A stretch of 64,000 bases of DNA from IMGVR_UViG_3300040801_004532:1-64000; one strand, 5' to 3'; counted from the stretch's first letter, positions 14,700 through 31,422 are shown. Notes: generated by a model not told the origin, from the letters alone. Made by a program: numbers and translations.

Positions 14700-14725
14700 G
14701 GGCGCTTCTACATATAGAAGCGCCC
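14700..14725 (-). terminator. Intrinsic terminator hairpin
   Basis: GGGCGCTTCTA/TAGAAGCGCCC stem, then TTTCCTTTT on the minus strand. Confidence 0.65.
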
Positions 14726-15511: not shown

Positions 15512-15985
15512 GTGGACCTACAAAAATTTATTTGGAGGAAAATTTTGAATGTAGAACAAAATCCACTTCTAGTATTAAACATTGATGAGAAGCTCCCATA
15601 TCATTTTATAATAGGAGTAGCGATACATACTATGAGATCTAAGGAACGTGGAAAAATGTTTCTTAAATATGGACCGCTAAGATTTACTAATGATGATATA
15701 AAAAGACTACAAAACGCAGCGTTATTATCAACCGATAAATTATTCAAAACATCACAGCTAGATTGTATCAAAATTGCAAATGTTGAAGAATTAGTTTCAA
15801 CCTTTAGTGCTATGAAATTATCATGTGCTGTAAATCAATGCAGCCTACATCATTTTTCTTCTGAGTATGATATAGAGGATGAATGGTTTGATACGCTTGT
15901 TAAGATGGCGAATACAGATAAGCACTCGGAGGAATTATTGGATAATGCACAAATCAACTATAAACCATTTCACTTCGGACAATGA
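15512..15985 (+). CDS. Hypothetical protein
   Basis: 157-aa ORF, GGAGG SD, GTG start. Confidence 0.6.
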   Translation: MDLQKFIWRKILNVEQNPLLVLNIDEKLPYHFIIGVAIHTMRSKERGKMFLKYGPLRFTNDDIKRLQNAALLSTDKLFKTSQLDCIKIANVEELVSTFSAMKLSCAVNQCSLHHFSSEYDIEDEWFDTLVKMANTDKHSEELLDNAQINYKPFHFGQ

Positions 15986-16454
15986 AGAATATAGTAATTT
16001 TTATCCTGTCGAAGTACAATTCGAAGGAATAGTATATCCTTCAGTTGAACATGCTTTTGTAGCAGCTAAAAGTCTAAATATAATGTTCAGAAAAGAGATT
16101 TCAGAGATGCCAGCTGATTCTGCTGGACTAGCAAAAAGAAAAGGAAGAAAAGTTAAACTACGCCCAGATTGGGATCTGATTAAGTTAAGAGTCATGAGAG
16201 AATTGTTAGATCAAAAATTTAGGCAACCTAAATTTAAAGAGAAACTATTAGCCAGCGGAGATGCTGAAATAATTGAAGGAAACTATTGGCATGATAACTA
16301 TTGGGGTGATTGCTATTGTAAAAAATGTATAAATATAAAAGGAAAAAATCACCTAGGAAGACTTATTATGAAAATAAGAGAGGAAATCAAAAATGAAGAT
16401 CTTAGTAACCGGAGATATACACAACGAGTTCGGACGATTAAACGAACTAATTAA
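15945..16454 (+). CDS. NADAR (YbiA-like) family protein
   Basis: SNFY...YPSVEHAFVAAK...AKRKGR...W...M...KF.Q...LL.SG...IEGN.W.D.YWG...G.N.LG..IM.IR. Confidence 0.9.
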   Translation: MHKSTINHFTSDNEEYSNFYPVEVQFEGIVYPSVEHAFVAAKSLNIMFRKEISEMPADSAGLAKRKGRKVKLRPDWDLIKLRVMRELLDQKFRQPKFKEKLLASGDAEIIEGNYWHDNYWGDCYCKKCINIKGKNHLGRLIMKIREEIKNEDLSNRRYTQRVRTIKRTN

Positions 16455-17070
16455 CAAGAAACAACCTGATATGATAATTTGTTGTGGGGATTTTGGTTAT
16501 TGGCCAAAAATTGAGTCGCTAGAAAAACTATCAAATATCAAACTTCAATCAGCAAAAAAATTGCTATGGTGTGATGGAAATCATGAAGATCATTGGTCTC
16601 TAAAAGAAAGAGAAACAGATGAACTAGCACCAAATATTTTTTATATGCCAAGAGGATCAACATATACTTTAGATGATGGGAGAGTAATCTTATTTATGGG
16701 CGGAGCAGATTCAATTGATAAAGAGTGGAGAAGACTGGGTGTTGATTGGTTTCCAGAAGAAATAATCTCACAAAAAGATTTTGAAAATCTGCCTGATTAT
16801 AATACTAGAATTGATATTATTATTTCACATACATGCCCCGAGTGCTTAGTTGATGAAATGCGAAAAACTTATCCTGAAAAGGGATATGAACCATCTAACA
16901 CAGCATTATCAAGGCTGTTAAATATCTACAAACCAGATTTATGGTTTTTCGGTCACTGGCACAGTTATAGAGAAGGTGTTGTTGAAAACACTAAATGGTA
17001 TGCTCTTTCAGCTCCTGGTTTTGAAACTAGATGGTGGATGTGGTTACCAGAAAGGAGGCGAGTTTTTTAA
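16393..17070 (+). CDS. Calcineurin-like metallophosphoesterase
   Basis: GDIH, GDFG, GNHE, SHT and GHWH motifs. Confidence 0.9.
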   Translation: MKILVTGDIHNEFGRLNELINKKQPDMIICCGDFGYWPKIESLEKLSNIKLQSAKKLLWCDGNHEDHWSLKERETDELAPNIFYMPRGSTYTLDDGRVILFMGGADSIDKEWRRLGVDWFPEEIISQKDFENLPDYNTRIDIIISHTCPECLVDEMRKTYPEKGYEPSNTALSRLLNIYKPDLWFFGHWHSYREGVVENTKWYALSAPGFETRWWMWLPERRRVF

Positions 17071-17119
17071 TTTAATTGCTAGTAAATCTTTTTACAACAA
17101 AACCAAAACGGAGGTCTAA

Positions 17120-18886
17120 ATGACGTTAATCATCATGTTCGTGATCTTTCTACTGGCAGCAATTTTTGTTCCGAAATTCATCCCGGACGTCAAATACAAT
17201 CGTGGATACGATGATGTCCAAACAAAAGATATGGGCTGGATTCGTAATACGGTGCGGGGAGCATGCGTCGTTTTGGCAATCCTATGCTTCCTCAGCATGA
17301 GCTGCTTCACCATTGATTCTGACAGCGTTGGCCATATGAAACGGGTATATTTTGGAGAATCCATGCCCTCTGGCCGGATCATTGCAGATCAAAATCAAAA
17401 GGGGCCGCAGGCAAACATTATCGCTCCTGGATTCCATCTGATGCCATTCATTAAGGTTACCCACGATATCGAAGAACTTCCTTTGATTGAAGTTCCCGAA
17501 GGACAGTATGGGTACCTTGTTGCAAAAGATGGTCGTCCCATGCCCGATGGACAATTCATTGCCTCAGCATGGGAGAATGTAAGTGATATGATCAATGCTG
17601 AAAAATTCATGGGCTACCTGGATGAGTCTGAAACCCCGTTGGGAATCAAAGGTCCCCAACTTACCGTTCTCCCGCCTGGCCAATACCGGGTCAATCGCTA
17701 TTTGTTTGATGTTTATGCCGACACCGCAACAGATGTTCCAATCGGTCATGTGGCCGTGGTCAAGTCCAACGTGGGAGATCATTACAATGGTGATCCGATC
17801 CTTCCGACTGGGGTTGACAAAACCACACTTTCCGTCCCGATTGTTCCGAAAGGACATAAAGGGGTTTGGAACGAAGTTCTTCGGCCGGATCGTTATTACC
17901 TAAACAAAAAAGCATATGATATTATTATCATTCCAACACAGGTTCAAACCTGGAAATATCTAGGAGGATACGAACGTCGTTTTATTGATCTAACCCTAAA
18001 TGACGATGGCAAAATTCAACAACATGTACGAAGCCTTCAGGTTGACATTCCAAAAGATGCAGCCGATGGTTCAGTTCTTCTTCGCGTTGAAAACTGGGAT
18101 GTCTTTCAGGATGCAAGAATCCAGGTTCAGGTCACCCCGGAAAATGCTCCATTTGTTGTTGCAGCAGCGGGAGGAATTTCCGCCATCGAAGACAAAATTA
18201 TGACTCCGACATTTAGGAGTGTTCTTCGTAATGAAGCTGCAAAAAATATTGTAGAAACTACAGAGGTAAAGGGTAAAGAAACAAAAATCAGTCGCCCAAG
18301 AAGAGTTCTTGATCTTCTTTATAAAAGAGAGGGCCTGGAAAGTGCAGTCGAGAGCAAGCTGATTCCAGAAGGCGAGAAATATGGTCTGACAGTTATGGAA
18401 GTCAGATTTGGGGATCCGGTTGTTCCTCCCGAACTATTGGTTCCTGGCAAAAGAAAACAGCTCGCCGAATCCTTGATGGCAACCTATAAACAGGAGCAAG
18501 AAGCGCAAATCAAGCGTGTTGAATCTGAACGAGAACGAGCCCGAGCAGATCAGCAACCTGTCCTGATGAAATCTGAGATTGGAATCAAGGTGGCTGACAA
18601 TGAAAAGAAAGCCCGAATCAAACGAGGTGAAGGTGAAGAAGCTTATTTGAAAGCTGTCGCCAACGGGCAAAGGGCTCAGGCTACTGTACTCGGGCAGGAT
18701 CGTGCCTTCGAACTGGCATATGTTGAAAAGATCCTTGAAGCAGCAGTTAAAAATCCGGAGATTATCAAATACCCCGGAACACTCGTCATGGGATCAACTG
18801 GCGGGTTTGAAGGTGCAGCAGCAATTCTCGGTCGAAGCAATCTCAATATGGGACTGGCAACCCCCGTGCCTGCTGTAACCAAGTAG
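17120..18886 (+). CDS. SPFH/band-7 (flotillin-like) membrane protein
   Basis: Two N-terminal TM segments, repeated PGxY/H beta units, SPFH-like core, C-terminal coiled coil. Confidence 0.8.
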   Translation: MTLIIMFVIFLLAAIFVPKFIPDVKYNRGYDDVQTKDMGWIRNTVRGACVVLAILCFLSMSCFTIDSDSVGHMKRVYFGESMPSGRIIADQNQKGPQANIIAPGFHLMPFIKVTHDIEELPLIEVPEGQYGYLVAKDGRPMPDGQFIASAWENVSDMINAEKFMGYLDESETPLGIKGPQLTVLPPGQYRVNRYLFDVYADTATDVPIGHVAVVKSNVGDHYNGDPILPTGVDKTTLSVPIVPKGHKGVWNEVLRPDRYYLNKKAYDIIIIPTQVQTWKYLGGYERRFIDLTLNDDGKIQQHVRSLQVDIPKDAADGSVLLRVENWDVFQDARIQVQVTPENAPFVVAAAGGISAIEDKIMTPTFRSVLRNEAAKNIVETTEVKGKETKISRPRRVLDLLYKREGLESAVESKLIPEGEKYGLTVMEVRFGDPVVPPELLVPGKRKQLAESLMATYKQEQEAQIKRVESERERARADQQPVLMKSEIGIKVADNEKKARIKRGEGEEAYLKAVANGQRAQATVLGQDRAFELAYVEKILEAAVKNPEIIKYPGTLVMGSTGGFEGAAAILGRSNLNMGLATPVPAVTK

Positions 18887-18937
18887 AATGAAAAGGTGGG
18901 AGGGGAGTATTCCTCCCACCTTTCCCAAGGAGCTAAA

Positions 18938-19324
18938 ATGTCAGATCAAATTTATATTGGAGCATTTGATGGGTCTGCAAAACCAAATCCTGGCGAAATA
19001 ACAATTGGCGGATGGATTGCAGATTCTGATAAAAAAACGCTTATTTCATTTACCGAAAAAATCGGCTATGGTACAAACAATGAAGCAGAATATCTAGCAT
19101 TTATAAGGCTCCTAAAGGAGGCAAAAGGATTAGGGATTAAAAAATTATCAATAAAGGGAGATTCCTCATTAGTTGTAAATCAAATAAACGGCACATGGAA
19201 AATAAAAGAACCAAGGATGAAGGAGTTAAACAATAAGGCCCATTCTATTATGGAAGGAATGGTTATAAAACTAACTCATGTAAAACGAAAATTTAACATC
19301 GTTGCAGACTCACTAACCAGGTAA
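18938..19324 (+). CDS. rnhA: Ribonuclease HI
   Basis: FDGSAKPNPG, TNNEAEY, GDSSLVVNQ, HVKR..N..AD motifs. Confidence 0.9.
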   Translation: MSDQIYIGAFDGSAKPNPGEITIGGWIADSDKKTLISFTEKIGYGTNNEAEYLAFIRLLKEAKGLGIKKLSIKGDSSLVVNQINGTWKIKEPRMKELNNKAHSIMEGMVIKLTHVKRKFNIVADSLTR

Positions 19325-19381
19325 CCTTGGAATACAACAGTTTCCTTGCATGGTTATCAATTTCAAAGAAAGGATTTCAAC

Positions 19382-20236
19382 ATGCGTATCGAATTGCTAA
19401 TTATTGATCCACAGAATGATTTTTGCTGGCCGGGACTTAACCCGATTGAAGTTTCAGATGAAGGCAAACGAGTCCTTCCTTCTGAAGTATTCAAACCGGG
19501 CGCCCTTTATGTTCCGGGGGCAGAAGAAGACATGACCAGGGTGGCTGCCATGGTTCGGCGCCTGAAGGACAAACTGGACGACATCCACATCACCTTGGAC
19601 AGCCATCACTACATCGACATCGCCCATCCTCCGTTTTGGATTTCTTCCAGCGGAAAGAATCCGGATCCGTTTACCATCATCACAAAAGATGATGTGGCGA
19701 ACGGAGTGTGGCGAGCAACCAACCCCCAATTCCAGGATCGTGTGATGGAATATGTCACACAACTGGAAGTGAACGCCCGTTACCCGTTATGCATCTGGCC
19801 GGTCCATTGTGTCATCGGGAGCTGGGGCTATGGGGTATTTCCGGACCTACTCAAAGCCATCTTGGAGTGGGAATCGGATTTTGCCATGGCAGACTATGTA
19901 ACAAAGGGATCGAATCTTTGGACGGAACATTACAGTGCGGTTCAAGCAGATGTCCCGGATCCCGAAGATCCCGACACCCAGCTCAACATGCGCCTCATCG
20001 AAACCCTCCAGGAGGCAGATGAAATCATCCTGGTCGGCGAGGCAAGATCACATTGCCTTGCCAATACGGTCATCGACATCGCAAACAATTTCGGGGAGGA
20101 AAACATCAAAAAGATGGTTCTCCTTGAAGATGGGTCAAGCGATGTCCCCGGCTTTGAAAACCTTGGGGAGGATTTCGTCAAAGAAATGAAGGGCCGAGGC
20201 ATGCGTATTTCGACCACCACGGAATATCTAAAATGA
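19382..20236 (+). CDS. Nicotinamidase/isochorismatase-family cysteine hydrolase
   Basis: IIDPQNDF, LDSH, WPVHC, KG, GEARSHC catalytic motifs. Confidence 0.85.
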   Translation: MRIELLIIDPQNDFCWPGLNPIEVSDEGKRVLPSEVFKPGALYVPGAEEDMTRVAAMVRRLKDKLDDIHITLDSHHYIDIAHPPFWISSSGKNPDPFTIITKDDVANGVWRATNPQFQDRVMEYVTQLEVNARYPLCIWPVHCVIGSWGYGVFPDLLKAILEWESDFAMADYVTKGSNLWTEHYSAVQADVPDPEDPDTQLNMRLIETLQEADEIILVGEARSHCLANTVIDIANNFGEENIKKMVLLEDGSSDVPGFENLGEDFVKEMKGRGMRISTTTEYLK

Positions 20237-20466
20237 AAGGGGGCGGGGAGATAGACTTCATCGCTTCCGATTTAGAAGATCTCCACAGAATCAAGTGGAT
20301 AGCAATTCATAACCCTCATCGAGGGTTGCCACTTGATCGCTCCCCCGAACTCACAGAAGACGACCGAGTTATTTTAGATTTTGAATGTAAAGTTATCAAT
20401 TGCTGCAAAAAAGGCAAGATACCAGCTCAAATAACCATCGAAGATGCTAAGCTGATACAGGGGTGA
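20233..20466 (+). CDS. Hypothetical protein
   Basis: 77-aa ORF whose start overlaps the upstream stop. Confidence 0.5.
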   Translation: MKGGGEIDFIASDLEDLHRIKWIAIHNPHRGLPLDRSPELTEDDRVILDFECKVINCCKKGKIPAQITIEDAKLIQG

Positions 20467-20469
20467 CAT

Positions 20470-20721
20470 ATGTACTTTGTTTGTCATTATTGGGATAATG
20501 GAAATGATTTTTGGATCTCGCCATGCAGTAAACCAGAAGACGTAATCAACTATATTGAATCGTTTGAGCTTGATCCCAAGGATTACTATATTATAAAGGG
20601 ACGAATGCTAAAAGGAATTGAAAATACTTCTTTTAACCTGGTAACTTTCAAGGAGAATGAATATGCCAAGACTGATGGCGACAACGGAGGATCAGGTAAT
20701 CAAGATACCGGGTCCGGGTAA
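20470..20721 (+). CDS. Hypothetical protein
   Basis: 83-aa ORF within the operon. Confidence 0.5.
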   Translation: MYFVCHYWDNGNDFWISPCSKPEDVINYIESFELDPKDYYIIKGRMLKGIENTSFNLVTFKENEYAKTDGDNGGSGNQDTGSG

Positions 20722-21421
20722 CTTCCAATTTTCGGCGATTCGAATCGAGGATCTCGGAGCAACAGAATACACCCTGGCCACCCTGGTGGTTGATATTTCA
20801 GGAAGTGTAACCACATTTGCCGATGAGCTACTCGACTGTATCAAAACAATCATCAAAGCATGTCAAAAGAATCCGCGAGCAGAAAATATGCTGGTTCGCC
20901 TCCTTCTGTTCAATGAAAAAATTTATGAAATACATGGTTTCAAAAATCTATCAGATATTGATGTAAACAACTATGAGGCTCTTCGCCCAGACGGATTTAC
21001 AGCTCTATATGATGCAACTTATGATGCAATCGGCGCAACCCTGGAATACTCCAAACGATTGGTTGACCAGGATTTCGATTGCAATGGCGCCGTTTATATT
21101 GTGACGGATGGTATGAACAACCGGGGTAAGATGACCCCAAGTGCAATCGCCCAAAAGATCGGCGAAGCGGTTCATAACGAAGAGATTGAATCGCTTATTT
21201 CAATCCTTGTTGGGCTGCATGATCCCAATAGTTCATGGGAACAGGAGGTTCGGGAATCCTTGGAGATGTTCCACGAGAAAGCAAACCTCACGGAATTTCT
21301 GGACATCGGCGAAGCAACACCACAAAAGCTGGCCAAGTTGGCCGGTTGGGTAAGCGAAAGCGTCAGCAGCCAAAGCCAGGCACTCGGCAGCGGCGCTCCA
21401 AGCCAAACCCTCCAGTTCTAA
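20657..21421 (+). CDS. vWA domain protein (TerY-like)
   Basis: MIDAS motif DISGS, G.TALYDA, VTDG. Confidence 0.85.
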   Translation: MNMPRLMATTEDQVIKIPGPGNFQFSAIRIEDLGATEYTLATLVVDISGSVTTFADELLDCIKTIIKACQKNPRAENMLVRLLLFNEKIYEIHGFKNLSDIDVNNYEALRPDGFTALYDATYDAIGATLEYSKRLVDQDFDCNGAVYIVTDGMNNRGKMTPSAIAQKIGEAVHNEEIESLISILVGLHDPNSSWEQEVRESLEMFHEKANLTEFLDIGEATPQKLAKLAGWVSESVSSQSQALGSGAPSQTLQF

Positions 21422-21524
21422 TGTTTAGAATAATGAACATTAAATAGGTTAATGATGTATATAATGAACATTAAACCGAAAACGGGGGGAGGCAACTCCC
21501 CCCATAAATCTTAGGGAGTAGAAA

Positions 21525-21905
21525 ATGAAAAAAAGTCAGTTGATTGAAACGATTTATCGAAGCAAATTGACCAAAACGAACAAGTCGACAAAGGTCAAAA
21601 AGGGCGTTATGGTGGCCCAACATACAGATGGATATACAGTCGGGATCGGTTTCTCCATGTGTCACAGGAGAGATCGATTTGATTATCATCCCGGAACAGG
21701 TCAAAGAACCCCCGGATGGGGAAAAACGGTAGCAGCCGAAAGGGCCGAAAAGTGGAAGGATCGACTATCAATTGAAATTCCCCAAAGCATTGAACCGGAA
21801 ATGAAAGACTTTATCGGTCGGTGCCGTCGTTATTTCAAAGACAAGGTACTTCCGCCATGGGCCGAAATCCTGATTAACCAGGAATGTGAAAACCCAAAAG
21901 AATAA
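21525..21905 (+). CDS. Hypothetical protein
   Basis: 126 aa; GFSMC...D.F....GK..A..RA motif. Confidence 0.6.
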   Translation: MKKSQLIETIYRSKLTKTNKSTKVKKGVMVAQHTDGYTVGIGFSMCHRRDRFDYHPGTGQRTPGWGKTVAAERAEKWKDRLSIEIPQSIEPEMKDFIGRCRRYFKDKVLPPWAEILINQECENPKE

Positions 21906-21915
21906 AGGAGATGTT

Positions 21916-23031
21916 ATGACCCAGCCCAAAATTGTTGCAAAATCGCTCAAGACCATTCTGGAGGATCCGGGGGTTCAATGTATTTTGGACCGGTCCTGCA
22001 ATCTTTCCGACGAACTAATTAACGAGGTTCAAGGCTGGTGGGGGTATGATCTGTTCAATAGAAAACCCAGCCCTGCATATGATGAATACGGGGTTTTCTC
22101 CGGCACCGACCTTGACCTGGCATGCTTCCTTTATTCCCTTTCGGGACGCGGTGCAGTTATCAACATCCCCACATACAAATCCCACACCCAAACCAAACTT
22201 CGGGAAGACCAAATGGTCACCTCCAAGGCAAATCGCCATGGCGAAGTTCTTGGTGTTGGTGCCAACAAAATTTTCTTTTCCTTCAACGTCACCATTATGG
22301 ATCAGAATGTTGTCGGGGAAGAAAAGGTTGGCGATTTTCGGACCTTCTCATTAACCGACAAACTCGGTGACTGGTATGATGGGTGGCAGCGAATCGAGTT
22401 CGTGCCAACCCTCAAAGAAAATCGGTTTATCACCGAAAACAAACTATGGACGGGAAGCAAGATCATTTTCAAAAATTTCATTCATCCGAATCGGTGGACA
22501 TCCATGTTCGGTCGGCATTACGTGATCACGAAAATGCTGATCGACCGCCTGGAGGATGAATGTAAATTCATTCAGGCCGAAATCAAGCGAATCCAGGCAG
22601 CCGGAATTGAATTTCCAGAGGGCGAAGGCCCCATAAAATATTCATATGATTATGGAAAGGGTGTTCAGAAAAAATTCCCGGCGTTTGAAACAATGATCTT
22701 TATTCCAGATACCGAAATCAAGGAAGATTATGATTTCTATCCCACCGACCAGGAAGGATTGGTCAATGCATACAACCGACGGAAGCGACTCCTCTATGGC
22801 GTCATTCCTTCACTTCGATTCATGACCAGGGCCTCAGAATTTGCCCATTACAAACATCCGGATCGTTTTCCGGCATGGATGCGTGGGACAAAATGGGAGG
22901 AAGATTTTACCATCCCCGGGAAACGAATCAAGTGGCAACGGCTGAAACTATTTCAACCCAAGGTCGGAACCCAATCAATATCAATCCTGAAACGATCGTT
23001 CGAAAAATCGGCGACAGTTTCAGGCGATTAA
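21916..23031 (+). CDS. Hypothetical protein (GC-richer codon usage)
   Basis: 371 aa from ATG behind AGGAG. Confidence 0.7.
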   Translation: MTQPKIVAKSLKTILEDPGVQCILDRSCNLSDELINEVQGWWGYDLFNRKPSPAYDEYGVFSGTDLDLACFLYSLSGRGAVINIPTYKSHTQTKLREDQMVTSKANRHGEVLGVGANKIFFSFNVTIMDQNVVGEEKVGDFRTFSLTDKLGDWYDGWQRIEFVPTLKENRFITENKLWTGSKIIFKNFIHPNRWTSMFGRHYVITKMLIDRLEDECKFIQAEIKRIQAAGIEFPEGEGPIKYSYDYGKGVQKKFPAFETMIFIPDTEIKEDYDFYPTDQEGLVNAYNRRKRLLYGVIPSLRFMTRASEFAHYKHPDRFPAWMRGTKWEEDFTIPGKRIKWQRLKLFQPKVGTQSISILKRSFEKSATVSGD

Positions 23032-23044
23032 TTTGATACTCGTA

Positions 23045-23077
23045 GGGAATGGGGAATATTATATATTCCCCATTCCC
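23045..23077. terminator. Strong hairpin (terminator or processing site)
   Basis: GGGAATGGGGAATAT/ATATTCCCCATTCCC inverted repeat; no clear T-tract. Confidence 0.5.
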
Positions 23078-23109
23078 ATACTAAACAGGCTTTTAAATAG
23101 GAGGTTGAG

Positions 23110-23325
23110 TTGCTTCCAAAAACAAAGATCGTAAACTATCCAATCAAAGTTCCGTTGAGTGATTATTGTTGGAGCCATGAGCCTCCGCATACTATATGCG
23201 AAAATTTTGACAACGAGGGCGGACATGCCAGATGTATTTTGTTTCGTAGAGAAACAATTCACAGAAATGATAAAGGGTATTTAAAACCAGAAATCTGTAA
23301 GAACCTTAAAACTAGTTGGGAATAA
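23110..23325 (+). CDS. Small Cys-rich hypothetical protein
   Basis: 71 aa, GGAGG SD, TTG start. Confidence 0.5.
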   Translation: MLPKTKIVNYPIKVPLSDYCWSHEPPHTICENFDNEGGHARCILFRRETIHRNDKGYLKPEICKNLKTSWE

Positions 23326-23343
23326 TACTACCAGGAAGGGAAA

Positions 23344-23778
23344 ATGATTAAAAATTTTTTCTGTCTGACTTTAATAATTGCGTCATTATTCATTTTTTCA
23401 TGTGGTCCAACAATTGACGTTAGAATACCTATAAAAGTAGAAAAGCTTCATATAGATTTTGAAGAAGAAACTGTCCATTTAAAATATCATATAAAGAAAA
23501 CTATATTTATTGATAGCGTTGATAATCTAGAAGAAAAACAAATGATTATATTGGAACGTGCAAAAACCGATTTAATTAATGCTGATTTTTCAGTGGTAAT
23601 AATAAGCGTTCCAGGCGGATCTACAGATATAACCTATTTCTGTGGTCCAGTTAAAATTGGTTTCTCAAATCTAGCAATATCAAGAGCCCTAGCATTGAAA
23701 TTATTTTCTCCATCAAAAGATGACCCATCAAAACCAATTATGTCAAATGAATTATCAACCCCAAAAAAACCACTTTGA
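23344..23778 (+). CDS. Putative lipoprotein
   Basis: Signal peptide ending in LFIFSC lipobox-like motif. Confidence 0.55.
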   Translation: MIKNFFCLTLIIASLFIFSCGPTIDVRIPIKVEKLHIDFEEETVHLKYHIKKTIFIDSVDNLEEKQMIILERAKTDLINADFSVVIISVPGGSTDITYFCGPVKIGFSNLAISRALALKLFSPSKDDPSKPIMSNELSTPKKPL

Positions 23779-23787
23779 GGAATTTAA

Positions 23788-24603
23788 ATGATTGAAATAG
23801 ATACCTTTCTTGAAATAGGAAGTCAACATCGAATGTGTGAGGATTATATCATTCAGGGAAACGATCCCACGCAATATATAATTTTGGCTGATGGTTGTAG
23901 TTCAGCCAACAATACAGAGATGGGCGCAAGAATTTTATGCCATCTTGCAAAACAATATCTTAAATACCGGGGCGAAGATAATCTATATTCTATTGGTTAT
24001 TCAGACCTTGGTAACTGGGTTATCTATAATGCAGAATTAATTGCAAGGCAGATGGGGTTATCATTATCTTCTTTAACTTCAACCTTGATTGTTTCATTTA
24101 TAAGAGATGGAATGGTTAAGGTTTTTATGTACGGAGATGGTTGTATTATAACAACATCCCCCAACCATGATAGTATAGAGATCACTAGAGTTGACTTTGA
24201 GGGGAATGCTCCATATTATTTGGTTTATCGGGTAGATAAAGAAAGAGGACAAATCTATCACGAAAATTGCCCAGAAAAAATTACATCTATAAATTTCTCA
24301 ACCAAAACAGATTTACCATATACCAATCGTTGTGCTTACGATTATCCCAGCGAATTTACATATTTAATGTCCACACATCCATTGATCATGATCGCATCAG
24401 ATGGGCTGTTTTCATTTTTGATGGGTAATGGTTCATCTGATTTAATAGACCCGATGGACCTTTTAAAAGGCGGATTTATTTCTTTTAAAAATACAAAAGG
24501 TTCTTTCCTCCAAAGAAGACTTAACAAATATATGAAACATCTATCAAAAGATGGAATCGCCCATTTTGATGATTTATCAGTAGGAGCATATTTAAAAAAG
24601 TAG
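23788..24603 (+). CDS. PP2C-family protein phosphatase
   Basis: G..H..CEDY, LADGCSS, YGDG, ASDG, DDLS motifs. Confidence 0.85.
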   Translation: MIEIDTFLEIGSQHRMCEDYIIQGNDPTQYIILADGCSSANNTEMGARILCHLAKQYLKYRGEDNLYSIGYSDLGNWVIYNAELIARQMGLSLSSLTSTLIVSFIRDGMVKVFMYGDGCIITTSPNHDSIEITRVDFEGNAPYYLVYRVDKERGQIYHENCPEKITSINFSTKTDLPYTNRCAYDYPSEFTYLMSTHPLIMIASDGLFSFLMGNGSSDLIDPMDLLKGGFISFKNTKGSFLQRRLNKYMKHLSKDGIAHFDDLSVGAYLKK

Positions 24604-24612
24604 GAGGGAGAA

Positions 24613-24921
24613 ATGACCGCCATTGATATAACACCTATAGCTGCTGACGTGCCAAAACTTCAAAAGAATTGGCCGACCTTTAAAGCAGTTAATGATTGTG
24701 ATCGAGATAAGATTGAACTGGATATGGAAGTAAGTATAAGAGTTAAAGGAGAAACTATAAGAGTTAAAATAGAAGCTATGAATGATTCCTTATTAATAGG
24801 AAAGGTTTTAACAAAAAAGTTTTATTTTGTTCAACCATTTATAGAAGGTGATATGATCCAATTTGAAAAGAAAAACGTCATAGATATTTTTGACATAAAC
24901 AGAACAGGAGTACTTTACTAA
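24613..24921 (+). CDS. Hypothetical protein
   Basis: 102 aa with strong SD. Confidence 0.55.
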   Translation: MTAIDITPIAADVPKLQKNWPTFKAVNDCDRDKIELDMEVSIRVKGETIRVKIEAMNDSLLIGKVLTKKFYFVQPFIEGDMIQFEKKNVIDIFDINRTGVLY

Positions 24922-25109
24922 TGCCCTATTATCATTGTAGAAAATGTCACCACGAATTTGAACGTATTCCATATGAAAAAGAAAATGTTATTTGTGATTG
25001 GTGTGGCGCCGACCGGCCAATGATATTAGAAGAAAAAACTCCGCTTGAAAAAATGGCTGAGAATGCTGATAAATTACTAGATAAATTGATCAAAGAAGGG
25101 AAAAAATAA
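24921..25109 (+). CDS. Zinc-ribbon protein (FmdB-like)
   Basis: MPYYHCRKCHHEFE...CDWCG; start and stop overlap both neighbours. Confidence 0.6.
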   Translation: MPYYHCRKCHHEFERIPYEKENVICDWCGADRPMILEEKTPLEKMAENADKLLDKLIKEGKK

Positions 25110-26797
25110 TGGAAATATTTGTGGGGGGTAAAAAGGTTACCTTAACACAAAAGAACTTCGTCGCAAAAGGAGGCGAAGGGCAAATATTTCATCGTAGTAA
25201 TGTTGCATATAAAATATATGAAGACCTTACAAAGATGATTCCGCCCGCAAAGATCGGCGAATTGAATCTCCTGGATGACCCATGTATTGTTAGACCCAAG
25301 GATCTTATTATGAATAATAAAAAGCAGCCAGTGGGTTTTACAATGGACTGGGTAGGGGACTCAAATCATCCATTATGTAAATTATTTACAACAAAATTTC
25401 AGCGGGATAATGGAATTATAATTGATCAAATTATAGCTTTAGTTGAAAAGATAAAAGAAGTAACAAATTTCATTCATAACCATAATTGCCTTATAGTAGA
25501 TGGTAATGAACTAAACTATTTAGTCAAGGGAGATTTTGTAACTCCCTTGTTTATTGATGTCAATTCATGGCAAACTCCATCATATCAAGCAACAGCAATA
25601 ATGCCTTCAATTAGAGATTGGTCAACTGATACATTTACACAATTGACTGACTGGTTTTCATTTGCTGTTGTTTCATTTCAACTTTTCGTTGGAATACATC
25701 CATATAAGGGCAAACATCCAAAGTATAGAAAAAATGATTTTGCAAGTCGAGTTAGAGATGGTATCTCAGTATTTAATCCCCAAGTAAACTTGCCTCCAAC
25801 TACAAGGGACTTTTCTTTGATCCCATCTTCATATAAAGATTGGTTTTATCAAATGTTCGAAAACAAAGATAGAAAACCGCCGCCAACTCTACCAGGAGAG
25901 GCAGGAGTTATACAAGTTACAATACAGGTCATTACAAGCACTGATGCTTTTGAGGTAACTCTTATTAAGGATTATGGTGAAGAAATTTTATTTCATAATC
26001 CAGAGTTTGATATAACAAAAACAAAATCAAAAATCTTTATAGGCAAAACCGATTACCGGGTTTCGAAGGGAGTTGAAATATTATTTGTATCGCCACAACA
26101 AATCCCCATACTTGTAAAAATACAAGATGGTATGGCCCAATTTAAATGCCTTCAAGCTGGTTATGTAATGAAGGGAAATAATATTGCCTGTACTGAAATG
26201 ATGATTGTTAATAATACGTTGTATCTAAAAAATGGAATGAAACTGATTGAAATGGACTTTAAAGAAATGTCCCAAAATATCATTCCAATGCCCAAAACAA
26301 CGTGGACAGTCGAACCTCTTTCAAGTCAAATACTAAGCAATGTTATTTATCAAAGTGTCCTTGGAAAAGCCTTCCTCTGTATACCGGAACCTTTGAGCGG
26401 AAAAAGTAGGTTCCATAACATTCGTATCCCCGAGATAGATTCTCATCGAGTAATTGAGGCAAAATATGAAAATCAGGTTTGTTGTCTTATTACTCACACA
26501 GGGAAAGAATATGAACGTGTTATCATTGTATTTGATAAATCTTTTCAGAAATATACATTGCGAATTATTCAGGGGATTGACTACATTCCATTGAACTTTA
26601 CAGTTCTTGATAATGGCGTATGTGTTATGATCCCCGAAGATAATGTTGTTGAGTTATTTCTGAATCGAATGGATAAACAAGAGGTGAAACGGATTGAAGA
26701 TCCACAAATTGATAGTTCCATGAGGGTATTAAAAGATGGAACAAGAATCAAATTCTTCAAAGATAATAGCTTATATACAATGAAGATGAAAAAATAG
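25109..26797 (+). CDS. Ser/Thr protein kinase with C-terminal beta-rich domain
   Basis: GGEG loop, AYKIY, DGNELN catalytic loop, FIDVNS, TDWFSF. Confidence 0.85.
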   Translation: MEIFVGGKKVTLTQKNFVAKGGEGQIFHRSNVAYKIYEDLTKMIPPAKIGELNLLDDPCIVRPKDLIMNNKKQPVGFTMDWVGDSNHPLCKLFTTKFQRDNGIIIDQIIALVEKIKEVTNFIHNHNCLIVDGNELNYLVKGDFVTPLFIDVNSWQTPSYQATAIMPSIRDWSTDTFTQLTDWFSFAVVSFQLFVGIHPYKGKHPKYRKNDFASRVRDGISVFNPQVNLPPTTRDFSLIPSSYKDWFYQMFENKDRKPPPTLPGEAGVIQVTIQVITSTDAFEVTLIKDYGEEILFHNPEFDITKTKSKIFIGKTDYRVSKGVEILFVSPQQIPILVKIQDGMAQFKCLQAGYVMKGNNIACTEMMIVNNTLYLKNGMKLIEMDFKEMSQNIIPMPKTTWTVEPLSSQILSNVIYQSVLGKAFLCIPEPLSGKSRFHNIRIPEIDSHRVIEAKYENQVCCLITHTGKEYERVIIVFDKSFQKYTLRIIQGIDYIPLNFTVLDNGVCVMIPEDNVVELFLNRMDKQEVKRIEDPQIDSSMRVLKDGTRIKFFKDNSLYTMKMKK

Positions 26798-29060: not shown

Positions 29061-29876
29061 TTATTTGTTCTGAGAATTGGGAATGGGATCTATATTAAGA
29101 GGCAATGAATCCACAAATCGGAATACTTTCCACCCTAGTTTTCCAAGGATCGAATCTCTAATTGCATCTTTCTCGGGGTCGTGCCAGTAGGAACCGTCAT
29201 ATTCAAATGCAAGTTTTTCCTCTGGCACGGCCACATCTATACAGAAATCACCCAAAGGATATTCAAGAATTGCTGTCGGATATTTTTCTTTTACCATTTC
29301 ATAGAGTTGTAATTGGGGGGTTGAGATGCGGGGGGCGGCTAACCAACCTTTCTGACCATTAATAATTTGTTGCTTCCTTCTTTTTTTGGCTTTATCTTTT
29401 CCCATTATTTCTTCATAGGTTTTTCCTTTTAGTAAAGAAGGTCGCCCTTTTAAAGCATCTGAAACTTTTTTGGATATTTCTGGATCTTTTAATGGATTTA
29501 ATTCACCCAAAAAAAATTTTTTCCCATGATCAGTTTTCATAATATTTTTTTTACCAAATTTTCTTTTTGTAGTCTTTTCTGACTTTCCTAAAAGTTCTTC
29601 ACTAGAATATCCTATACCTCCATAGAGTTGGTTACATGTTTCTATAATTTGTGTTTCACATTTTTTCCTTCGTTTACTTCTTTTTTCAGAATCTTTTTTT
29701 GTCATTGTAGGAAGGTTGGGAAATTCTTCTCTAACATCACGAATTGTTTTTTTATGGAGTTTTAAGTGTTGCCAATGCAAAAATTGCATTTCTTTTCCGC
29801 AATAGGGACATACTACATATTTAACATCTACTACTAGGTGTATCCTATTTCTTTCTTTTCTTGTTAGCCGTTTCAT
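29061..29876 (-). CDS. Putative homing endonuclease (zinc finger, NUMOD-like region, DUF559/PD-(D/E)xK domain)
   Basis: CPYC...HLKLH; KGKTYEEIMG; ID.A......AFEYDGSYWH...RD..L...GWKVFR. Confidence 0.7.
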   Translation of the reverse strand: MKRLTRKERNRIHLVVDVKYVVCPYCGKEMQFLHWQHLKLHKKTIRDVREEFPNLPTMTKKDSEKRSKRRKKCETQIIETCNQLYGGIGYSSEELLGKSEKTTKRKFGKKNIMKTDHGKKFFLGELNPLKDPEISKKVSDALKGRPSLLKGKTYEEIMGKDKAKKRRKQQIINGQKGWLAAPRISTPQLQLYEMVKEKYPTAILEYPLGDFCIDVAVPEEKLAFEYDGSYWHDPEKDAIRDSILGKLGWKVFRFVDSLPLNIDPIPNSQNK

Positions 29877-29898
29877 ATTAATTTGTTCTGAACCGACG

Positions 29899-29939
29899 AA
29901 AAAAAGACCCAGAAGAGATTTCTCCCTTCTGGGTCTTTT
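29899..29939 (-). terminator. Terminator downstream of the major capsid gene
   Basis: AAAAGACCCAGAAG/CTTCTGGGTCTTTT stem with A/T runs. Confidence 0.8.
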
Positions 29940-29970
29940 AAAGTTAGGCTAATGTACCATACCCTATTGA

Positions 29971-31422
29971 TTATGCACCAATACTTAAAGTTGCAATCCC
30001 GGATGCCCTAACAAGAGCAGTTGCGTATCTACTTAGGATTGTCAAGCTTGGTGTATAGCCAAGTGGATACGGATGCAAAACTGCTGGCACATATGGGCTG
30101 TAAAAGTAAATAGCCTTTAGTTCTTCAACTGGTTTGTACACCATCAACATTGTTCCTTGTGTTACGACTGCTGATGTAAGAACTTTCCATTTTCCACCAG
30201 CAACTGTGGCTGAACGGTAACCTAGATCACCATCAACTGAGCTTGTTCCTGTATAGTTGAAGGTTTGTAGATCTTCAAGAATAGCAACATCTAGTGGGTT
30301 AGCTAGAATTGTATTTCCAGCTTCGATGTTGGTATCTGTATAGATCTGACCTGATAGTTCGTTCAATGGAACAATGATGTTCTCATGCCAATACTTGGTT
30401 CCCCATGTATATGTAACAGGTGGGGTACGGTTGAATGTCTTTTGATGTGTTGCAGAGTTCAAGCGAGTATTGGCTGTGATTAGAGCATTGATGATTTCTC
30501 TGTCAATGTCTAGCGCTACTTGCTGACCAAGAATGTTTACGATTTCAGCTTGCATTGAAACATCAAATAGAGCTCTCATGTCTTGCTCCATGTTGATTGT
30601 CCAATTTGCTGAGATCTGGCGGTCTCTTGCATATAGACGAATTTTGTCTACATTAAGAGTTACGCTTGGGTTAATTCTGTTTTCTTCTAGTGAAGTGGTT
30701 ACCTGGAAACGAGCATATAGAACTGTTCCAGTTGTACTAGAAATGTCTACAGTACCATTTAGGAAATCAACTTTACCAGAGATAACGTCAGCGGAACCAC
30801 CAACTGTTACACTTGATGAAAAGTGTCCTTCAACAGCAGGTACAATTGAAACGTCTGTCCATGCAGTACCGTCTGTAGAAACACCAGTAATTTCGAAGTC
30901 TCTTTCAAGGTGAGCCTGTGTGCTATTAAGACCAATTACACCAAGAACATCATATGACGAACTTGGAACAGCCATTGAAGCAGAAACAGGTGTACCTATT
31001 GCGGCACCTTGTGAAATATCTGTGCTTGTTACGGGTGCATCATACTGAGAAGGATTGTTTGATGGACTAAACTTGGCTTTAATAAACGCCTTAACTGTTT
31101 CAGGTTTGTCCATTGGTGAAACTGTTACGGCTTCTTTTGCAACTAGTTTCGGATAAAATACACGAAGAATGGGTAGAGTTAATGTTTCATATGGGTTGAT
31201 CTGAAACATTGAGTTCTCTAGAAGGTTAATTCTTGTGTTTTCCGCTAGCTGAACAAAAGCTGCCCGGTCTTTTTTGCTCTCGATTGATTCCGCTAGACCT
31301 TGTACATACGCATCAAAAGCAGCGTCATCAACAAGAACGGCTTTTAGATTACCTGGCTTTGATGGATCAATACCAGACATCTTTTTAGTGGTCGCATAGA
31401 CCTCTTGTAGCAACTCTTTCAT
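29971..31422 (-). CDS. Major capsid protein (T4 gp23-like)
   Basis: VSPM, R.ISA.WT..MEQD, EI...L...V...IDREII, FYSPYVP, SRYA motifs; head-gene context. Confidence 0.9.
   Translation of the reverse strand: MKELLQEVYATTKKMSGIDPSKPGNLKAVLVDDAAFDAYVQGLAESIESKKDRAAFVQLAENTRINLLENSMFQINPYETLTLPILRVFYPKLVAKEAVTVSPMDKPETVKAFIKAKFSPSNNPSQYDAPVTSTDISQGAAIGTPVSASMAVPSSSYDVLGVIGLNSTQAHLERDFEITGVSTDGTAWTDVSIVPAVEGHFSSSVTVGGSADVISGKVDFLNGTVDISSTTGTVLYARFQVTTSLEENRINPSVTLNVDKIRLYARDRQISANWTINMEQDMRALFDVSMQAEIVNILGQQVALDIDREIINALITANTRLNSATHQKTFNRTPPVTYTWGTKYWHENIIVPLNELSGQIYTDTNIEAGNTILANPLDVAILEDLQTFNYTGTSSVDGDLGYRSATVAGGKWKVLTSAVVTQGTMLMVYKPVEELKAIYFYSPYVPAVLHPYPLGYTPSLTILSRYATALVRASGIATLSIGA

What the first reader, a model, noticed from the sequence alone, without database searches (positions are those of the whole stretch)
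19382..26797. Phage-encoded, dispersed TerY-P-like triad (vWA + PP2C + kinase) linked to a nicotinamidase
Seen: vWA with MIDAS (20657-21421), PP2C (23788-24603) and Ser/Thr kinase (25109-26797), in that order with catalytic motifs intact, interleaved with small ORFs and preceded by a nicotinamidase. Established: vWA-PP2C-kinase triads are bacterial stress and anti-phage modules. Inference: the phage has co-opted a phosphorylation switch for inter-phage competition, host takeover or jamming of host defence. The 371-aa unknown at 21916-23031 is a candidate substrate or effector.
Basis: partly seen in the sequence, partly recalled or inferred. Interest (0 to 1): 0.7.

Follow-up and report, generated by a model that had tools for sequence, protein, structure and literature searches.

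The report
Phage nicotinamidase–vWA–phosphatase–kinase operon
This huge phage carries a four-gene module, found in hundreds of related phages, that joins a nicotinamide-recycling enzyme to a vWA, phosphatase and kinase signalling trio, which suggests that phages regulate NAD+ salvage by protein phosphorylation.

Summary
The window, the first 64 kb of a 248-kb virus record, encodes these proteins on the + strand:
- a catalytically intact nicotinamidase (19382-20236);
- a vWA protein with a full MIDAS site (20657-21421);
- a PP2C phosphatase (23788-24603);
- a Hanks-type kinase fused to a beta-propeller (25109-26797).

The four genes form one conserved module. Starting from the kinase, 34 viral and 31 MAG/genome loci show the order nicotinamidase-vWA-PP2C-kinase wherever enough flank was fetched, often with the genes contiguous. 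Starting from the nicotinamidase, 65 of 74 viral loci carry all three partners, and 55 have exactly this order. The scattered layout in this window comes from lineage-specific ORF insertions. The 371-aa ORF occurs in only 5 of 35 loci, so it is not a core part.

The trio resembles TerY-P. The best Swiss-Prot structural match of the vWA is E. coli YegL, and profiles align to YegL, PphC and YegI. The kinase, however, ends in a beta-propeller rather than a zinc ribbon or OB fold.

The new point is the context. In relatives, PncB, NadE, NMNAT/Nudix and NrtR-like genes flank the module or sit inside it. A co-fold supports kinase-vWA binding (0.74 against 0.00 for controls).

My best reading is a phospho-switch coupled to Preiss-Handler NAD+ salvage. 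The function itself is untested.

The parts
19382..20236 (+). Nicotinamidase (PncA-like, 284 aa), first gene of the conserved module
   Evidence: The family profile's top PDB hits are nicotinamidases (Pnc1, E 1.1e-15). The D9/K175/C225 triad and D73/H75/H142 metal site are invariant. It lies next to the vWA gene in nearly all related loci.
20657..21421 (+). TerY/YegL-like vWA protein (254 aa; likely start 20663) with a complete MIDAS site and a conserved Ser-rich C-terminal helix and tail
   Evidence: Model pLDDT 90, with only vWA folds among PDB matches. The top Swiss-Prot structural match is E. coli YegL, TM 0.64/0.73. hhalign to YegL gives probability 84.5%. Invariant residues are D46, S50, T115, D151, S233, S235, S238 and S240.
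23788..24603 (+). PP2C-family Ser/Thr phosphatase (271 aa)
   Evidence: Pfam PP2C_2, E 2.4e-11. The catalytic Asp motifs are invariant. hhalign to E. coli PphC gives probability 74.7%.
25109..26797 (+). Hanks-type Ser/Thr kinase (residues 1-262) fused to a C-terminal beta-propeller (about 275-562)
   Evidence: Model pLDDT 86, with LRRK2 kinase-WD40 as the top PDB matches. Catalytic residues are invariant. hhalign to E. coli YegI covers 237 columns at 24% identity, probability 87.7%. The predicted complex with the vWA scores ipSAE 0.74 against 0.00 for controls.
20233..20721 (+). Two small ORFs (77 and 83 aa) inserted between the nicotinamidase and vWA genes
   Evidence: No homologue in any related locus and no family hit. 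Relatives have the nicotinamidase and vWA genes adjacent.
21525..23778 (+). Block of four ORFs (126, 371/381, 71 and 144 aa) inserted between the vWA and PP2C genes; includes the 371-aa unknown at 21916-23031
   Evidence: The 371-aa ORF (cluster c14) occurs in only 5 of 35 loci. It has no Pfam, PHROG or PADLOC hit and no Atlas lead. Many relatives have the vWA and PP2C genes adjacent.
24613..25109 (+). Two small ORFs inserted between the PP2C and kinase genes: 102 aa, and a 62-aa CxxC...CxxC zinc-ribbon protein whose end overlaps the kinase start
   Evidence: Weak Zn_ribbon_8 hit, E 2e-4. Translation. The zinc-ribbon ORF is shared only with L005.
15879..16454 (+). NADAR-domain protein (NAD/ADP-ribose-related) upstream in the same + strand gene block; a recurrent neighbour of the module
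   Evidence: Pfam NADAR, E 5e-22. Cluster c4 is present in 13 of 35 loci. NCBIfam matches a NADAR anti-phage family below its cut-off.

Best explanation
The four genes form one ancestral operon: nicotinamidase (PncA), TerY/YegL-like vWA protein, PP2C phosphatase, and a Ser/Thr kinase with a beta-propeller. The operon is widespread in huge T4-like phages and occurs in a few bacterial chromosomes. It belongs to the phage's NAD+ salvage (Preiss-Handler) gene set.

Shown:
- the identity and intact active sites of all four proteins;
- their strict co-occurrence and gene order;
- the nesting of PncB, NadE, NMNAT/Nudix and NrtR-like genes around and inside the operon in relatives;
- a confident predicted complex between the kinase C-lobe and the vWA protein.

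Inferred mechanism:
- The kinase binds the vWA protein and phosphorylates it, most likely on the invariant serines of its C-terminal helix and tail. In integrin I domains that helix controls the MIDAS state.
- The PP2C resets the switch.
- The MIDAS site then holds or releases a partner, which could be PncA or another NAD+ salvage enzyme.
- The beta-propeller is the input or targeting domain.

The proposed net effect is that conversion of nicotinamide to nicotinate, and so rebuilding of NAD+, is gated by the state of infection, for example when host NADase defences cleave NAD+ into ADP-ribose and nicotinamide. This phage keeps only PncA, the trio and NADAR. It would rely on host PncB, NadD and NadE, or on genes in the missing 21% of its record.
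For: Identity of the parts.

Co-occurrence:
- From the kinase, 34 viral loci were found, and the four families are the only clusters shared by nearly all of them: 31-35 of 35, with the next cluster at 13.
- The order is the same in 31 MAG/genome loci.
- From the nicotinamidase, 186 viral stretches were found. Of the 74 loci with at least 6 kb downstream, 65 have vWA, PP2C and kinase, and 55 have the exact order.
- In the 441-kb complete relative, the nicotinamidase and vWA genes lie just beyond the first flank, in the same order.

NAD+ context:
- PncB: Pfam E 1e-69, and NCBIfam 483 bits, above its cut-off.
- NadE, NMNAT-Nudix, NAD-dependent ligase and NADAR are recurrent neighbours.
- PncB and NadE sit between vWA and PP2C, or between PP2C and kinase, in L025, L028, L099, L101, L118, L121, L123, L129 and L135.
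- PncB is present in 5 of 5 relatives that are at least 90% complete. NadE and NMNAT are each present in 3 of 5.
- NrtR-like ADPR-responsive regulators flank the module in MAG contigs and in Myxococcota chromosomes.

Kinase-vWA complex:
- ipSAE 0.74 against a best control of 0.00. The mark was reached by 58 of 80 solved complexes and 2 of 110 mismatched pairs.
- The three runs agree in at least 98% of contacts, and partner pLDDT is at least 85.
- Interface residues are more conserved than the rest: 0.84 vs 0.73 in the kinase and 0.69 vs 0.55 in the vWA, permutation p about 0.009 each.

TerY-P likeness. The definition of the triad is taken from PMC11090510.
Against: - There is no experimental or expression evidence. 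Only DNA runs hold the sequence.
- This phage's own record lacks PncB, NMNAT and NadE above cut-off, and also LigA. The module therefore persists without a phage-encoded downstream pathway.
- Adjacency could reflect a shared accessory or counter-defence island rather than a mechanistic coupling.
- The phospho-acceptor site is a guess. The vWA tail is modelled at low confidence (pLDDT about 60).
- HMMER-level similarity to the E. coli triad is weak: 16 bits for the kinase, 21 bits for the PP2C and none for the vWA.
- The co-fold used my own unpaired alignments, so the calibration counts hold only roughly.
Confidence: 0.55

Rival explanations
1. This is a phage-borne TerY-P defence system. The trio acts like the bacterial stand-alone TerY-P anti-phage system and excludes competing phages. 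The nicotinamidase either starves rivals of nicotinamide or is an unrelated neighbour.
For: TerY-P-like modules are reported as stand-alone anti-phage systems and as parts of CoCoNuT systems (PMC11090510). The vWA, PP2C and kinase proteins resemble the E. coli triad. Copies exist in bacterial chromosomes.
Against: - The module behaves like a core gene set inherited with the phage lineage. It is present in every sufficiently long relative, and its divergence tracks the phages. It does not behave like a sporadic defence island.
- It is always tied to PncA and interleaved with NAD+ biosynthesis genes.
- The kinase C-terminus is a beta-propeller, not the OB fold or zinc ribbon of described TerY-P kinases.
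- No PADLOC TerY-P model matches, although this is a weak test.
Confidence: 0.15
2. This is a host-takeover kinase module with no functional tie to NAD+. The kinase phosphorylates host proteins, selected through the beta-propeller, to redirect the cell, much as T7 Gp0.7 does (this comparison is from my own knowledge). The PP2C and vWA proteins tune it. PncA is merely co-transcribed.
For: All kinase catalytic residues are intact. The beta-propeller lies outside the vWA interface and is free for another partner. This phage keeps the trio without PncB or NadE. The gene block also holds other accessory genes: a metallophosphoesterase, an SPFH protein and an RNase H.
Against: - The nicotinamidase-vWA adjacency survives in phages that share only 31-66% protein identity and in which every other neighbour has changed.
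- It also survives in GC-ameliorated Myxococcota chromosomal copies, which additionally have an NrtR-like gene.
- Starting from the nicotinamidase family, 88% of loci have the trio.
Confidence: 0.2
3. The nicotinamidase-like enzyme does not act on free nicotinamide. It is a longer-than-usual cysteine hydrolase, and the four genes might process another amide, such as a nucleotide-linked or signalling molecule derived from NAD+, with the trio as its regulator.
For: The protein is 284 aa, against 180-216 aa for most solved nicotinamidases, with extra sequence between the metal-binding motif and the WPxHC motif. It scores below the Pfam and NCBIfam cut-offs.
Against: All six residues that define nicotinamidases are invariant: the Asp-Lys-Cys triad and the Asp-His-His metal site, including the WPxHC motif. 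The best PDB and NCBIfam hits are nicotinamidases only. PncB, which uses the product nicotinate, is the commonest further neighbour.
Confidence: 0.1

Closest known systems
TerY-P triad (TerY-like vWA + PP2C + Ser/Thr kinase), as in tellurite-resistance clusters, CoCoNuT systems and the stand-alone anti-phage system (PMC11090510, citing Anantharaman 2012 and Gao 2020)
   Same: It has the same three protein types in the same order vWA-PP2C-kinase, with a perfect MIDAS motif, and is predicted to be a phosphorylation switch.
   Different: The kinase C-terminus is a beta-propeller rather than a zinc ribbon or OB fold. A nicotinamidase is a fixed fourth member. The module lies in huge phage genomes among NAD+ salvage genes. 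PADLOC TerY-P models do not match.
E. coli YegL-PphC-YegI operon (vWA, PP2C and an experimentally active eSTK; bioRxiv 10.1101/819920 and 10.1101/303594)
   Same: YegL is the best Swiss-Prot structural match of the phage vWA. Profile alignments cover the kinase core, the N-terminal half of the PP2C, and the vWA including its Ser-rich C-terminal helix. Both kinases are too divergent for Pfam Pkinase. K-12 also has an inserted gene (yegJ) splitting its operon.
   Different: The E. coli operon has no nicotinamidase or NAD+ genes nearby. The C-terminal half of YegI is not a beta-propeller. Sequence similarity is only at profile level.
NAD-jumbo phages, which encode salvage or Preiss-Handler NAD+ synthesis (Microbiome 2024, PMC11662467)
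   Same: Relatives of this phage encode PncA, PncB, NMNAT and NadE, together with NAD+-related enzymes, as that paper describes for 174 jumbo phages.
   Different: That paper does not mention a kinase, phosphatase or vWA (0 occurrences). This window's phage has only PncA and NADAR from the set in its 79%-complete record.
Phage NAD+ reconstitution pathways NARP1, NARP2 and NARP3 (bioRxiv 10.1101/2024.02.11.579819; PMC13464706)
   Same: These are phage-encoded rebuilding of NAD+ from its breakdown products, as a counter to NAD+-depleting immunity.
   Different: The enzymes differ (Adps/Namat; Nampt/Nmnat; PnuC/NadR). None uses a nicotinamidase, and none has a linked phospho-signalling module.
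NrtR-controlled pncA-pncB regulons of bacteria (an ADP-ribose-responsive Nudix-family repressor; from my own knowledge, plus the name of NCBIfam NF050029)
   Same: NrtR-like genes directly flank the module in many MAG and Myxococcota loci. This places the module in an ADPR-responsive NAD+ salvage regulon.
   Different: The hits are below the curated cut-off. The window's phage has no NrtR-like gene: its only related Nudix protein is MutT-like. No operator motif was found.

Membership tests
TerY-P triad | TerY-like vWA domain with a complete MIDAS motif (DxSxS...T...D) | tested here: met
   D46-x-S/T-x-S50, T115 and D151 are invariant. The fold is vWA. YegL is the top Swiss-Prot structural match.
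TerY-P triad | PP2C-like phosphatase with intact metal-binding aspartates | tested here: met
   Pfam PP2C_2, E 2.4e-11. The Asp motifs are invariant.
TerY-P triad | Hanks-type Ser/Thr kinase with catalytic Lys, Asp, Asn and Asp | tested here: met
   K35, D131, N136 and D150 are invariant or nearly so. The fold is a kinase. hhalign to YegI gives probability 87.7%.
TerY-P triad | The three genes are co-directional neighbours in one operon | tested here: met
   They are contiguous in L011, L012, L014, L018, L023, L029 and L034. In the window they keep the same order and strand but are split by inserted ORFs.
TerY-P triad | Kinase fused at its C-terminus to a zinc ribbon (CoCoNuT type) or an OB fold (stand-alone defence type) | tested here: not met
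   The C-terminal 290 residues model as a beta-propeller. A separate 62-aa zinc-ribbon ORF lies just upstream in this window, but it is not conserved.
TerY-P triad | Recognition by the PADLOC TerY-P models | tested here: inconclusive
   No hit at E <= 1 for the window proteins or for divergent relatives. The E. coli YegL/PphC/YegI control is almost missed as well: TerY at E 0.032 and nothing for PphC.
TerY-P triad | Anti-phage or tellurite-resistance phenotype | not testable with these tools
   This needs expression in a host and a phage or tellurite challenge.
Nicotinamidase (PncA/Pnc1) | Asp-Lys-Cys catalytic triad | tested here: met
   D9, K175 and C225 are invariant and align to the corresponding Pnc1 motifs.
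Nicotinamidase (PncA/Pnc1) | Asp-His-His metal site, including the WPxHC motif | tested here: met
   D73, H75 and H142 are invariant and align to the DWH and WPVHC motifs of Pnc1.
Nicotinamidase (PncA/Pnc1) | Score above the curated family cut-offs (Pfam Isochorismatase, NCBIfam PncA) | tested here: not met
   Pfam 17.3 bits against 27. NCBIfam 31.8 bits against 174. The family profile does reach E 1e-15 against solved nicotinamidases.
Nicotinamidase (PncA/Pnc1) | Hydrolysis of nicotinamide to nicotinate | not testable with these tools
   This needs an enzyme assay.
NAD-jumbo phage / complete phage-encoded Preiss-Handler pathway | PncA, PncB, NaMN/NMN adenylyltransferase and NadE all in one phage genome | tested here: not met
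   The phage's own record is 79% complete. It has no PncB or NMNAT, and no NadE above cut-off. The feature is met in relatives G018, G030 and G031.

The most novel reading that the evidence does not exclude
The PncA-vWA-PP2C-kinase cassette is a phosphorylation-gated NAD+ rescue device. The kinase's beta-propeller senses NADase-type immunity or its products. The kinase and PP2C flip the vWA MIDAS switch, and this turns on deamidating (Preiss-Handler) salvage of nicotinamide. It would be a regulated fourth route of phage NAD+ reconstitution, and the first assigned input and output for any TerY-P-type triad.
Probability: 0.3. Interest if true: 0.85.

Novelty: new variant of a known kind. Interest (0 to 1): 0.72.

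Why it matters
TerY-P triads are common in bacteria and act in anti-phage defence, but their input, their output and the role of the vWA protein are unknown. This module is a very large natural family. The kinase has 1738 homologues at E <= 0.001 in a database clustered at 90% identity. The vWA has at least 564 clusters at 50% identity with E <= 1e-30. The nicotinamidase is encoded in 186 viral stretches. In this family a TerY-P-like trio is hard-wired to one enzyme of known chemistry and embedded in NAD+ salvage. That gives a concrete, testable link between Ser/Thr phosphorylation and the contest between phage and host over NAD+. It would add a regulated, PncA-based route to the known phage NAD+ reconstitution pathways. 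It also supplies a tractable pair, the kinase and the vWA protein, for working out how such triads function.

Tried and rejected
- Megablast of the region against 50,697 phage records: no match. tblastn of the kinase found only three unannotated huge-phage records.
- PHROGs: one unknown-function family for the vWA protein.
- PADLOC: no TerY-P hit. I judged this uninformative after the E. coli control.
- Single-sequence and profile HMMER against the PDB for the vWA and the kinase: no significant hit, only a 30-residue kinase helix match. Structure prediction was needed.
- HMMER scores of the phage profiles against the E. coli triad are weak. Specific orthology to YegL/PphC/YegI is therefore not claimed.
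- The promoter and terminator scan is not above shuffled expectation for promoters: 52 found against 44 expected. The T4 late-promoter motif is not enriched. No shared motif lies upstream of the nicotinamidase across 80 loci. Timing and operon boundaries stay open.
- No RNA run holds the region.
- The Atlas search of the 371-aa ORF gave only low-score leads.
- The exhaustive profile search with the vWA alignment was saturated by the family itself, so it gave the family size but no distant cellular relatives.
- Pfam scans of neighbours of the Myxococcota copies gave almost nothing, probably because my ORF calls are poor at 70% GC. Whether those copies lie in prophages is open.
- I considered that the two DUF559-like ORFs flanking the + strand block are paralogues. 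Their similarity is marginal (E 0.006), so I dropped the idea.

Full report
**What the window is.** The window is the first 64 kb of a 248,136-bp IMG/VR virus record, estimated 79% complete. It carries a T4-type major capsid gene (Pfam Gp23, 29971-31422, minus strand). Near-identical DNA is found only in a freshwater sediment metagenome. No catalogued phage matches the region at DNA level. At protein level the kinase matches only three unannotated huge-phage records of 462-595 kb.

**Checking the observation.**
- PP2C. It is recognised directly: Pfam PP2C_2, E 2.4e-11. An alignment of 28 homologues keeps all the metal-binding aspartate motifs.
- vWA and kinase. Neither window protein has a Pfam, PHROG-function or PADLOC hit, so I tested them by structure.
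  - The vWA model (pLDDT 90) matches only vWA domains in the PDB. Its MIDAS residues are invariant.
  - The kinase model (pLDDT 86) is a protein-kinase domain followed by a beta-propeller. LRRK2 kinase-WD40 is the best PDB match. The glycine loop, the beta-3 lysine, the catalytic Asp/Asn and the DFG-equivalent Asp are invariant or nearly so in 23 homologues.
- Nicotinamidase. A single-sequence Pfam scan scores it below cut-off. A profile of 27 homologues hits solved nicotinamidases first (yeast Pnc1, E 1.1e-15). The Asp-Lys-Cys triad and the Asp-His-His metal site, including the WPxHC motif, are all invariant.

**The four genes are one module.** I tested this from both ends.
- From the kinase. 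A scan of viral contigs with the kinase alignment returned 34 loci on contigs of up to 442 kb.
  - tblastn and all-against-all clustering of their ORFs show that only four protein families are shared by nearly all loci: kinase 35, PP2C 34, vWA 32 and nicotinamidase 31 of 35. The next family reaches only 13.
  - The order is nicotinamidase-vWA-PP2C-kinase on one strand. In L011, L012, L014, L018, L023, L029 and L034 the four genes are contiguous.
  - Loci that seemed to lack members were cut by the flank. In the complete 441-kb record, the nicotinamidase and vWA genes lie a few kb beyond the fetched stretch, in the same order.
- From an independent collection. A scan of genome and MAG contigs gave 31 more loci with the same order.
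- From the nicotinamidase. 186 viral stretches encode a relative. Of the 74 best loci with at least 6 kb downstream, 65 carry all three partners and 55 have exactly this order. Only two have the nicotinamidase with none of the trio genes in the fetched flanks.

The 'dispersed' layout in this window is therefore secondary. The spaces hold lineage-specific ORFs, most of them without any homologue. The 371-aa ORF occurs only in the window and its four nearest relatives, and neither family scans nor the Atlas explain it. It is an insertion, not a conserved partner.

**How large the family is.** The kinase has 1738 homologues at E <= 0.001 in the 90%-clustered database, nearly all about 560 aa long. 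The vWA profile finds 564 clusters at 50% identity with E <= 1e-30.

**Relation to TerY-P.** The triad is defined as a TerY-like vWA, a PP2C-like enzyme and a Ser/Thr kinase. The kinase is fused to a zinc ribbon in CoCoNuT systems and to an OB fold in the stand-alone defence system (PMC11090510). E. coli K-12 has such a triad, YegL-PphC-YegI (bioRxiv 10.1101/819920).

Evidence for likeness:
- Among 550,129 Swiss-Prot models, YegL is the best structural match of the phage vWA: TM 0.64/0.73 over 220 residues, reaching into the C-terminal tail.
- hhalign aligns the vWA profile to YegL over 171 columns, including the Ser-rich C-terminal helix. It aligns the PP2C profile to PphC over 120 columns, and the kinase profile to YegI over 237 columns at 24% identity. 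Probabilities are 75-88%.
- Like YegI, the phage kinase is too divergent for Pfam Pkinase.

Limits of that likeness:
- HMMER scores against the E. coli proteins are weak.
- PADLOC's TerY-P models do not match, though they barely see the E. coli triad either.
- The kinase C-terminus is a beta-propeller.

I therefore call the trio TerY-P-like in architecture and fold. It is a distinct variant, not a member of the described defence subtype.

The recurrent neighbours of the module in relatives are NAD+ genes.
- Nicotinate phosphoribosyltransferase PncB: Pfam E 1e-69, and NCBIfam 483 bits, above its cut-off.
- NAD synthase NadE, some copies with a glutaminase domain.
- An NMNAT-Nudix protein.
- An NAD-dependent DNA ligase.
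- NADAR. The NADAR gene is in this window at 15879-16454.

These genes are not merely nearby.
- In L025, L028, L099, L101, L118, L121, L123, L129 and L135, PncB and/or NadE sit between vWA and PP2C or between PP2C and kinase.
- In the complete 205-kb record G030, PncB, NadE and an NMNAT-type gene follow the kinase, with one unassigned ORF between the kinase and PncB.
- PncB is present in all five relatives that are at least 90% complete. NadE and NMNAT are each present in three.
- In many MAG loci, and in Myxococcota chromosomes, a Nudix protein directly flanks the module. The two I scanned, L053 and L063, match the ADPR-responsive NAD regulator NrtR best (E 6e-54 and 8e-36, below the curated cut-off).

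This window's own record has no PncB or NMNAT, no NadE above cut-off and no LigA. PncA plus the trio is therefore the retained core.

**What the literature says.** Jumbo phages with Preiss-Handler genes have been described (PMC11662467), but that paper never mentions a kinase, phosphatase or vWA. NARP1-3 use other enzymes. A survey of viral NAD+/ADPr systems does not mention PncA, PP2C or TerY. A search combining these terms found nothing relevant.

**A physical link inside the trio.** A co-fold of the kinase and vWA proteins scored ipSAE 0.74 in three runs, against 0.00 for the best of three controls.
- That mark was reached by 58 of 80 solved complexes and 2 of 110 mismatched pairs. The counts hold only roughly here, because my own alignments were used.
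- The runs agree in at least 98% of contacts, and partner pLDDT is at least 85.
- The interface lies on the kinase C-lobe, including residues beside the catalytic loop and the P+1 region. On the vWA it lies on loops 30-37, 73-77 and 135-141, plus tail residues 241-247. The beta-propeller is not involved.
- Interface positions are more conserved than the rest in both families, permutation p about 0.009 each.

**Proposed mechanism.** This paragraph is inference. The vWA protein ends in a helix and tail with four invariant serines (S233, S235, S238, S240). In integrin I domains, movement of the C-terminal helix sets the MIDAS affinity state (from my own knowledge). I propose the following:
- The kinase, docked on the vWA protein, phosphorylates this segment.
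- The PP2C reverses that phosphorylation.
- The MIDAS site then binds or releases a partner from the NAD+ salvage set.
- The free beta-propeller receives the input.

The biological logic is that NADase-type defences split NAD+ into ADP-ribose and nicotinamide, PncA commits nicotinamide to the Preiss-Handler route, and the switch would gate that step.

**Bacterial copies.** Most 'genome' hits are short MAG contigs and are probably mis-binned phage DNA. Three Myxococcota contigs (0.6-9.4 Mb) and a 974-kb Moduliflexus scaffold also carry copies.
- The Myxococcota loci have a uniform 69-74% GC. Two of the three, L063 and L064, lack the PP2C gene.
- In Moduliflexus, the PP2C-kinase pair lies next to TonB-receptor and CobN genes.
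- In a kinase tree these copies are nested among viral sequences. The tree is midpoint-rooted with SH-aLRT support only. This is compatible with transfer from phages to bacteria but does not prove it.

**Verdict.** The module is a new, very widespread variant of the TerY-P kind, with a fixed nicotinamidase partner and a beta-propeller kinase, set in phage NAD+ salvage. Its function is inferred, not shown.

Noticed in passing
window 15879-16454 (+): A NADAR-domain protein (Pfam E 5e-22) lies in the same + strand block, and 13 of 35 related loci have one near the module. NCBIfam also gives a sub-threshold match to a 'NADAR family anti-phage protein' model. It fits the NAD/ADP-ribose theme.
   Followed up: partly
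window 16393-19324 (+): Three accessory genes lie just upstream of the nicotinamidase: a calcineurin-like metallophosphoesterase (225 aa), a 588-aa protein with an SPFH/Band 7 domain, and an RNase H-like protein (RVT_3). Each is shared with only 1-7 relatives.
   Followed up: partly
window 29061-31422 (-): A T4-type major capsid protein (Pfam Gp23, E 3e-33) places the phage among T4-like huge phages. A DUF559/MTES endonuclease-like ORF (29061-29876) lies right beside it and looks like a homing-endonuclease insertion.
   Followed up: partly
window 24921-25109 (+): A 62-aa CxxC...CxxC zinc-ribbon ORF ends exactly where the kinase gene starts. Described TerY-P kinases of CoCoNuT systems carry a fused zinc ribbon. 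Here it is a separate gene, shared only with L005.
   Followed up: partly
window 18890-18925, 21482-21505 and 14700-14725: GC-rich perfect hairpins (10-14 bp stems) sit in the short gaps between genes: SPFH/RNase H, after the vWA gene, and at the edge of the + strand block. Their role as terminators, processing sites or repeats is unknown.
   Followed up: no
window 18001-22000: G+C is 0.445-0.453 over the end of the SPFH gene, the RNase H-like, nicotinamidase and vWA genes and the ORFs that follow, against 0.31-0.40 in the rest of the window. The PP2C and kinase genes are at 0.34-0.40.
   Followed up: no
L029 (record G028, 33,226 bp, direct terminal repeats, rated 100% complete): A small 'complete' virus record carries the full four-gene module plus PncB and an RNA ligase. 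It is either a small element that carries the cassette or an assembly or completeness artefact.
   Followed up: no
L063, L064, L057 (Myxococcota contigs of 9.4 Mb, 575 kb and 909 kb): These are chromosomal copies of the module at the host's G+C (about 0.70). Two lack the PP2C gene, and they are followed by an NrtR-like Nudix regulator. Whether they lie in prophages was not resolved.
   Followed up: partly
L003, L005, L007, L094, L107, L143: A second vWA paralogue (217-348 aa) lies near the module. This recalls the duplicated TerY genes of some TerY-P and CoCoNuT operons.
   Followed up: no
L037, L038 (MAGs labelled Promethearchaeota and Thermoplasmatales): The window's near relatives (48-49% kinase identity, full module) sit on 31-38 kb contigs binned as archaea. 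These are most likely phage contigs mis-binned into MAGs, so the host labels should not be trusted.
   Followed up: no
G000:C1:90879-91172 (-) (L069): This is the only trace of an NAD synthase-like PP-loop domain in the phage's own record (14 bits, below cut-off), inside a 314-aa ORF. It is probably another PP-loop ATPase.
   Followed up: no
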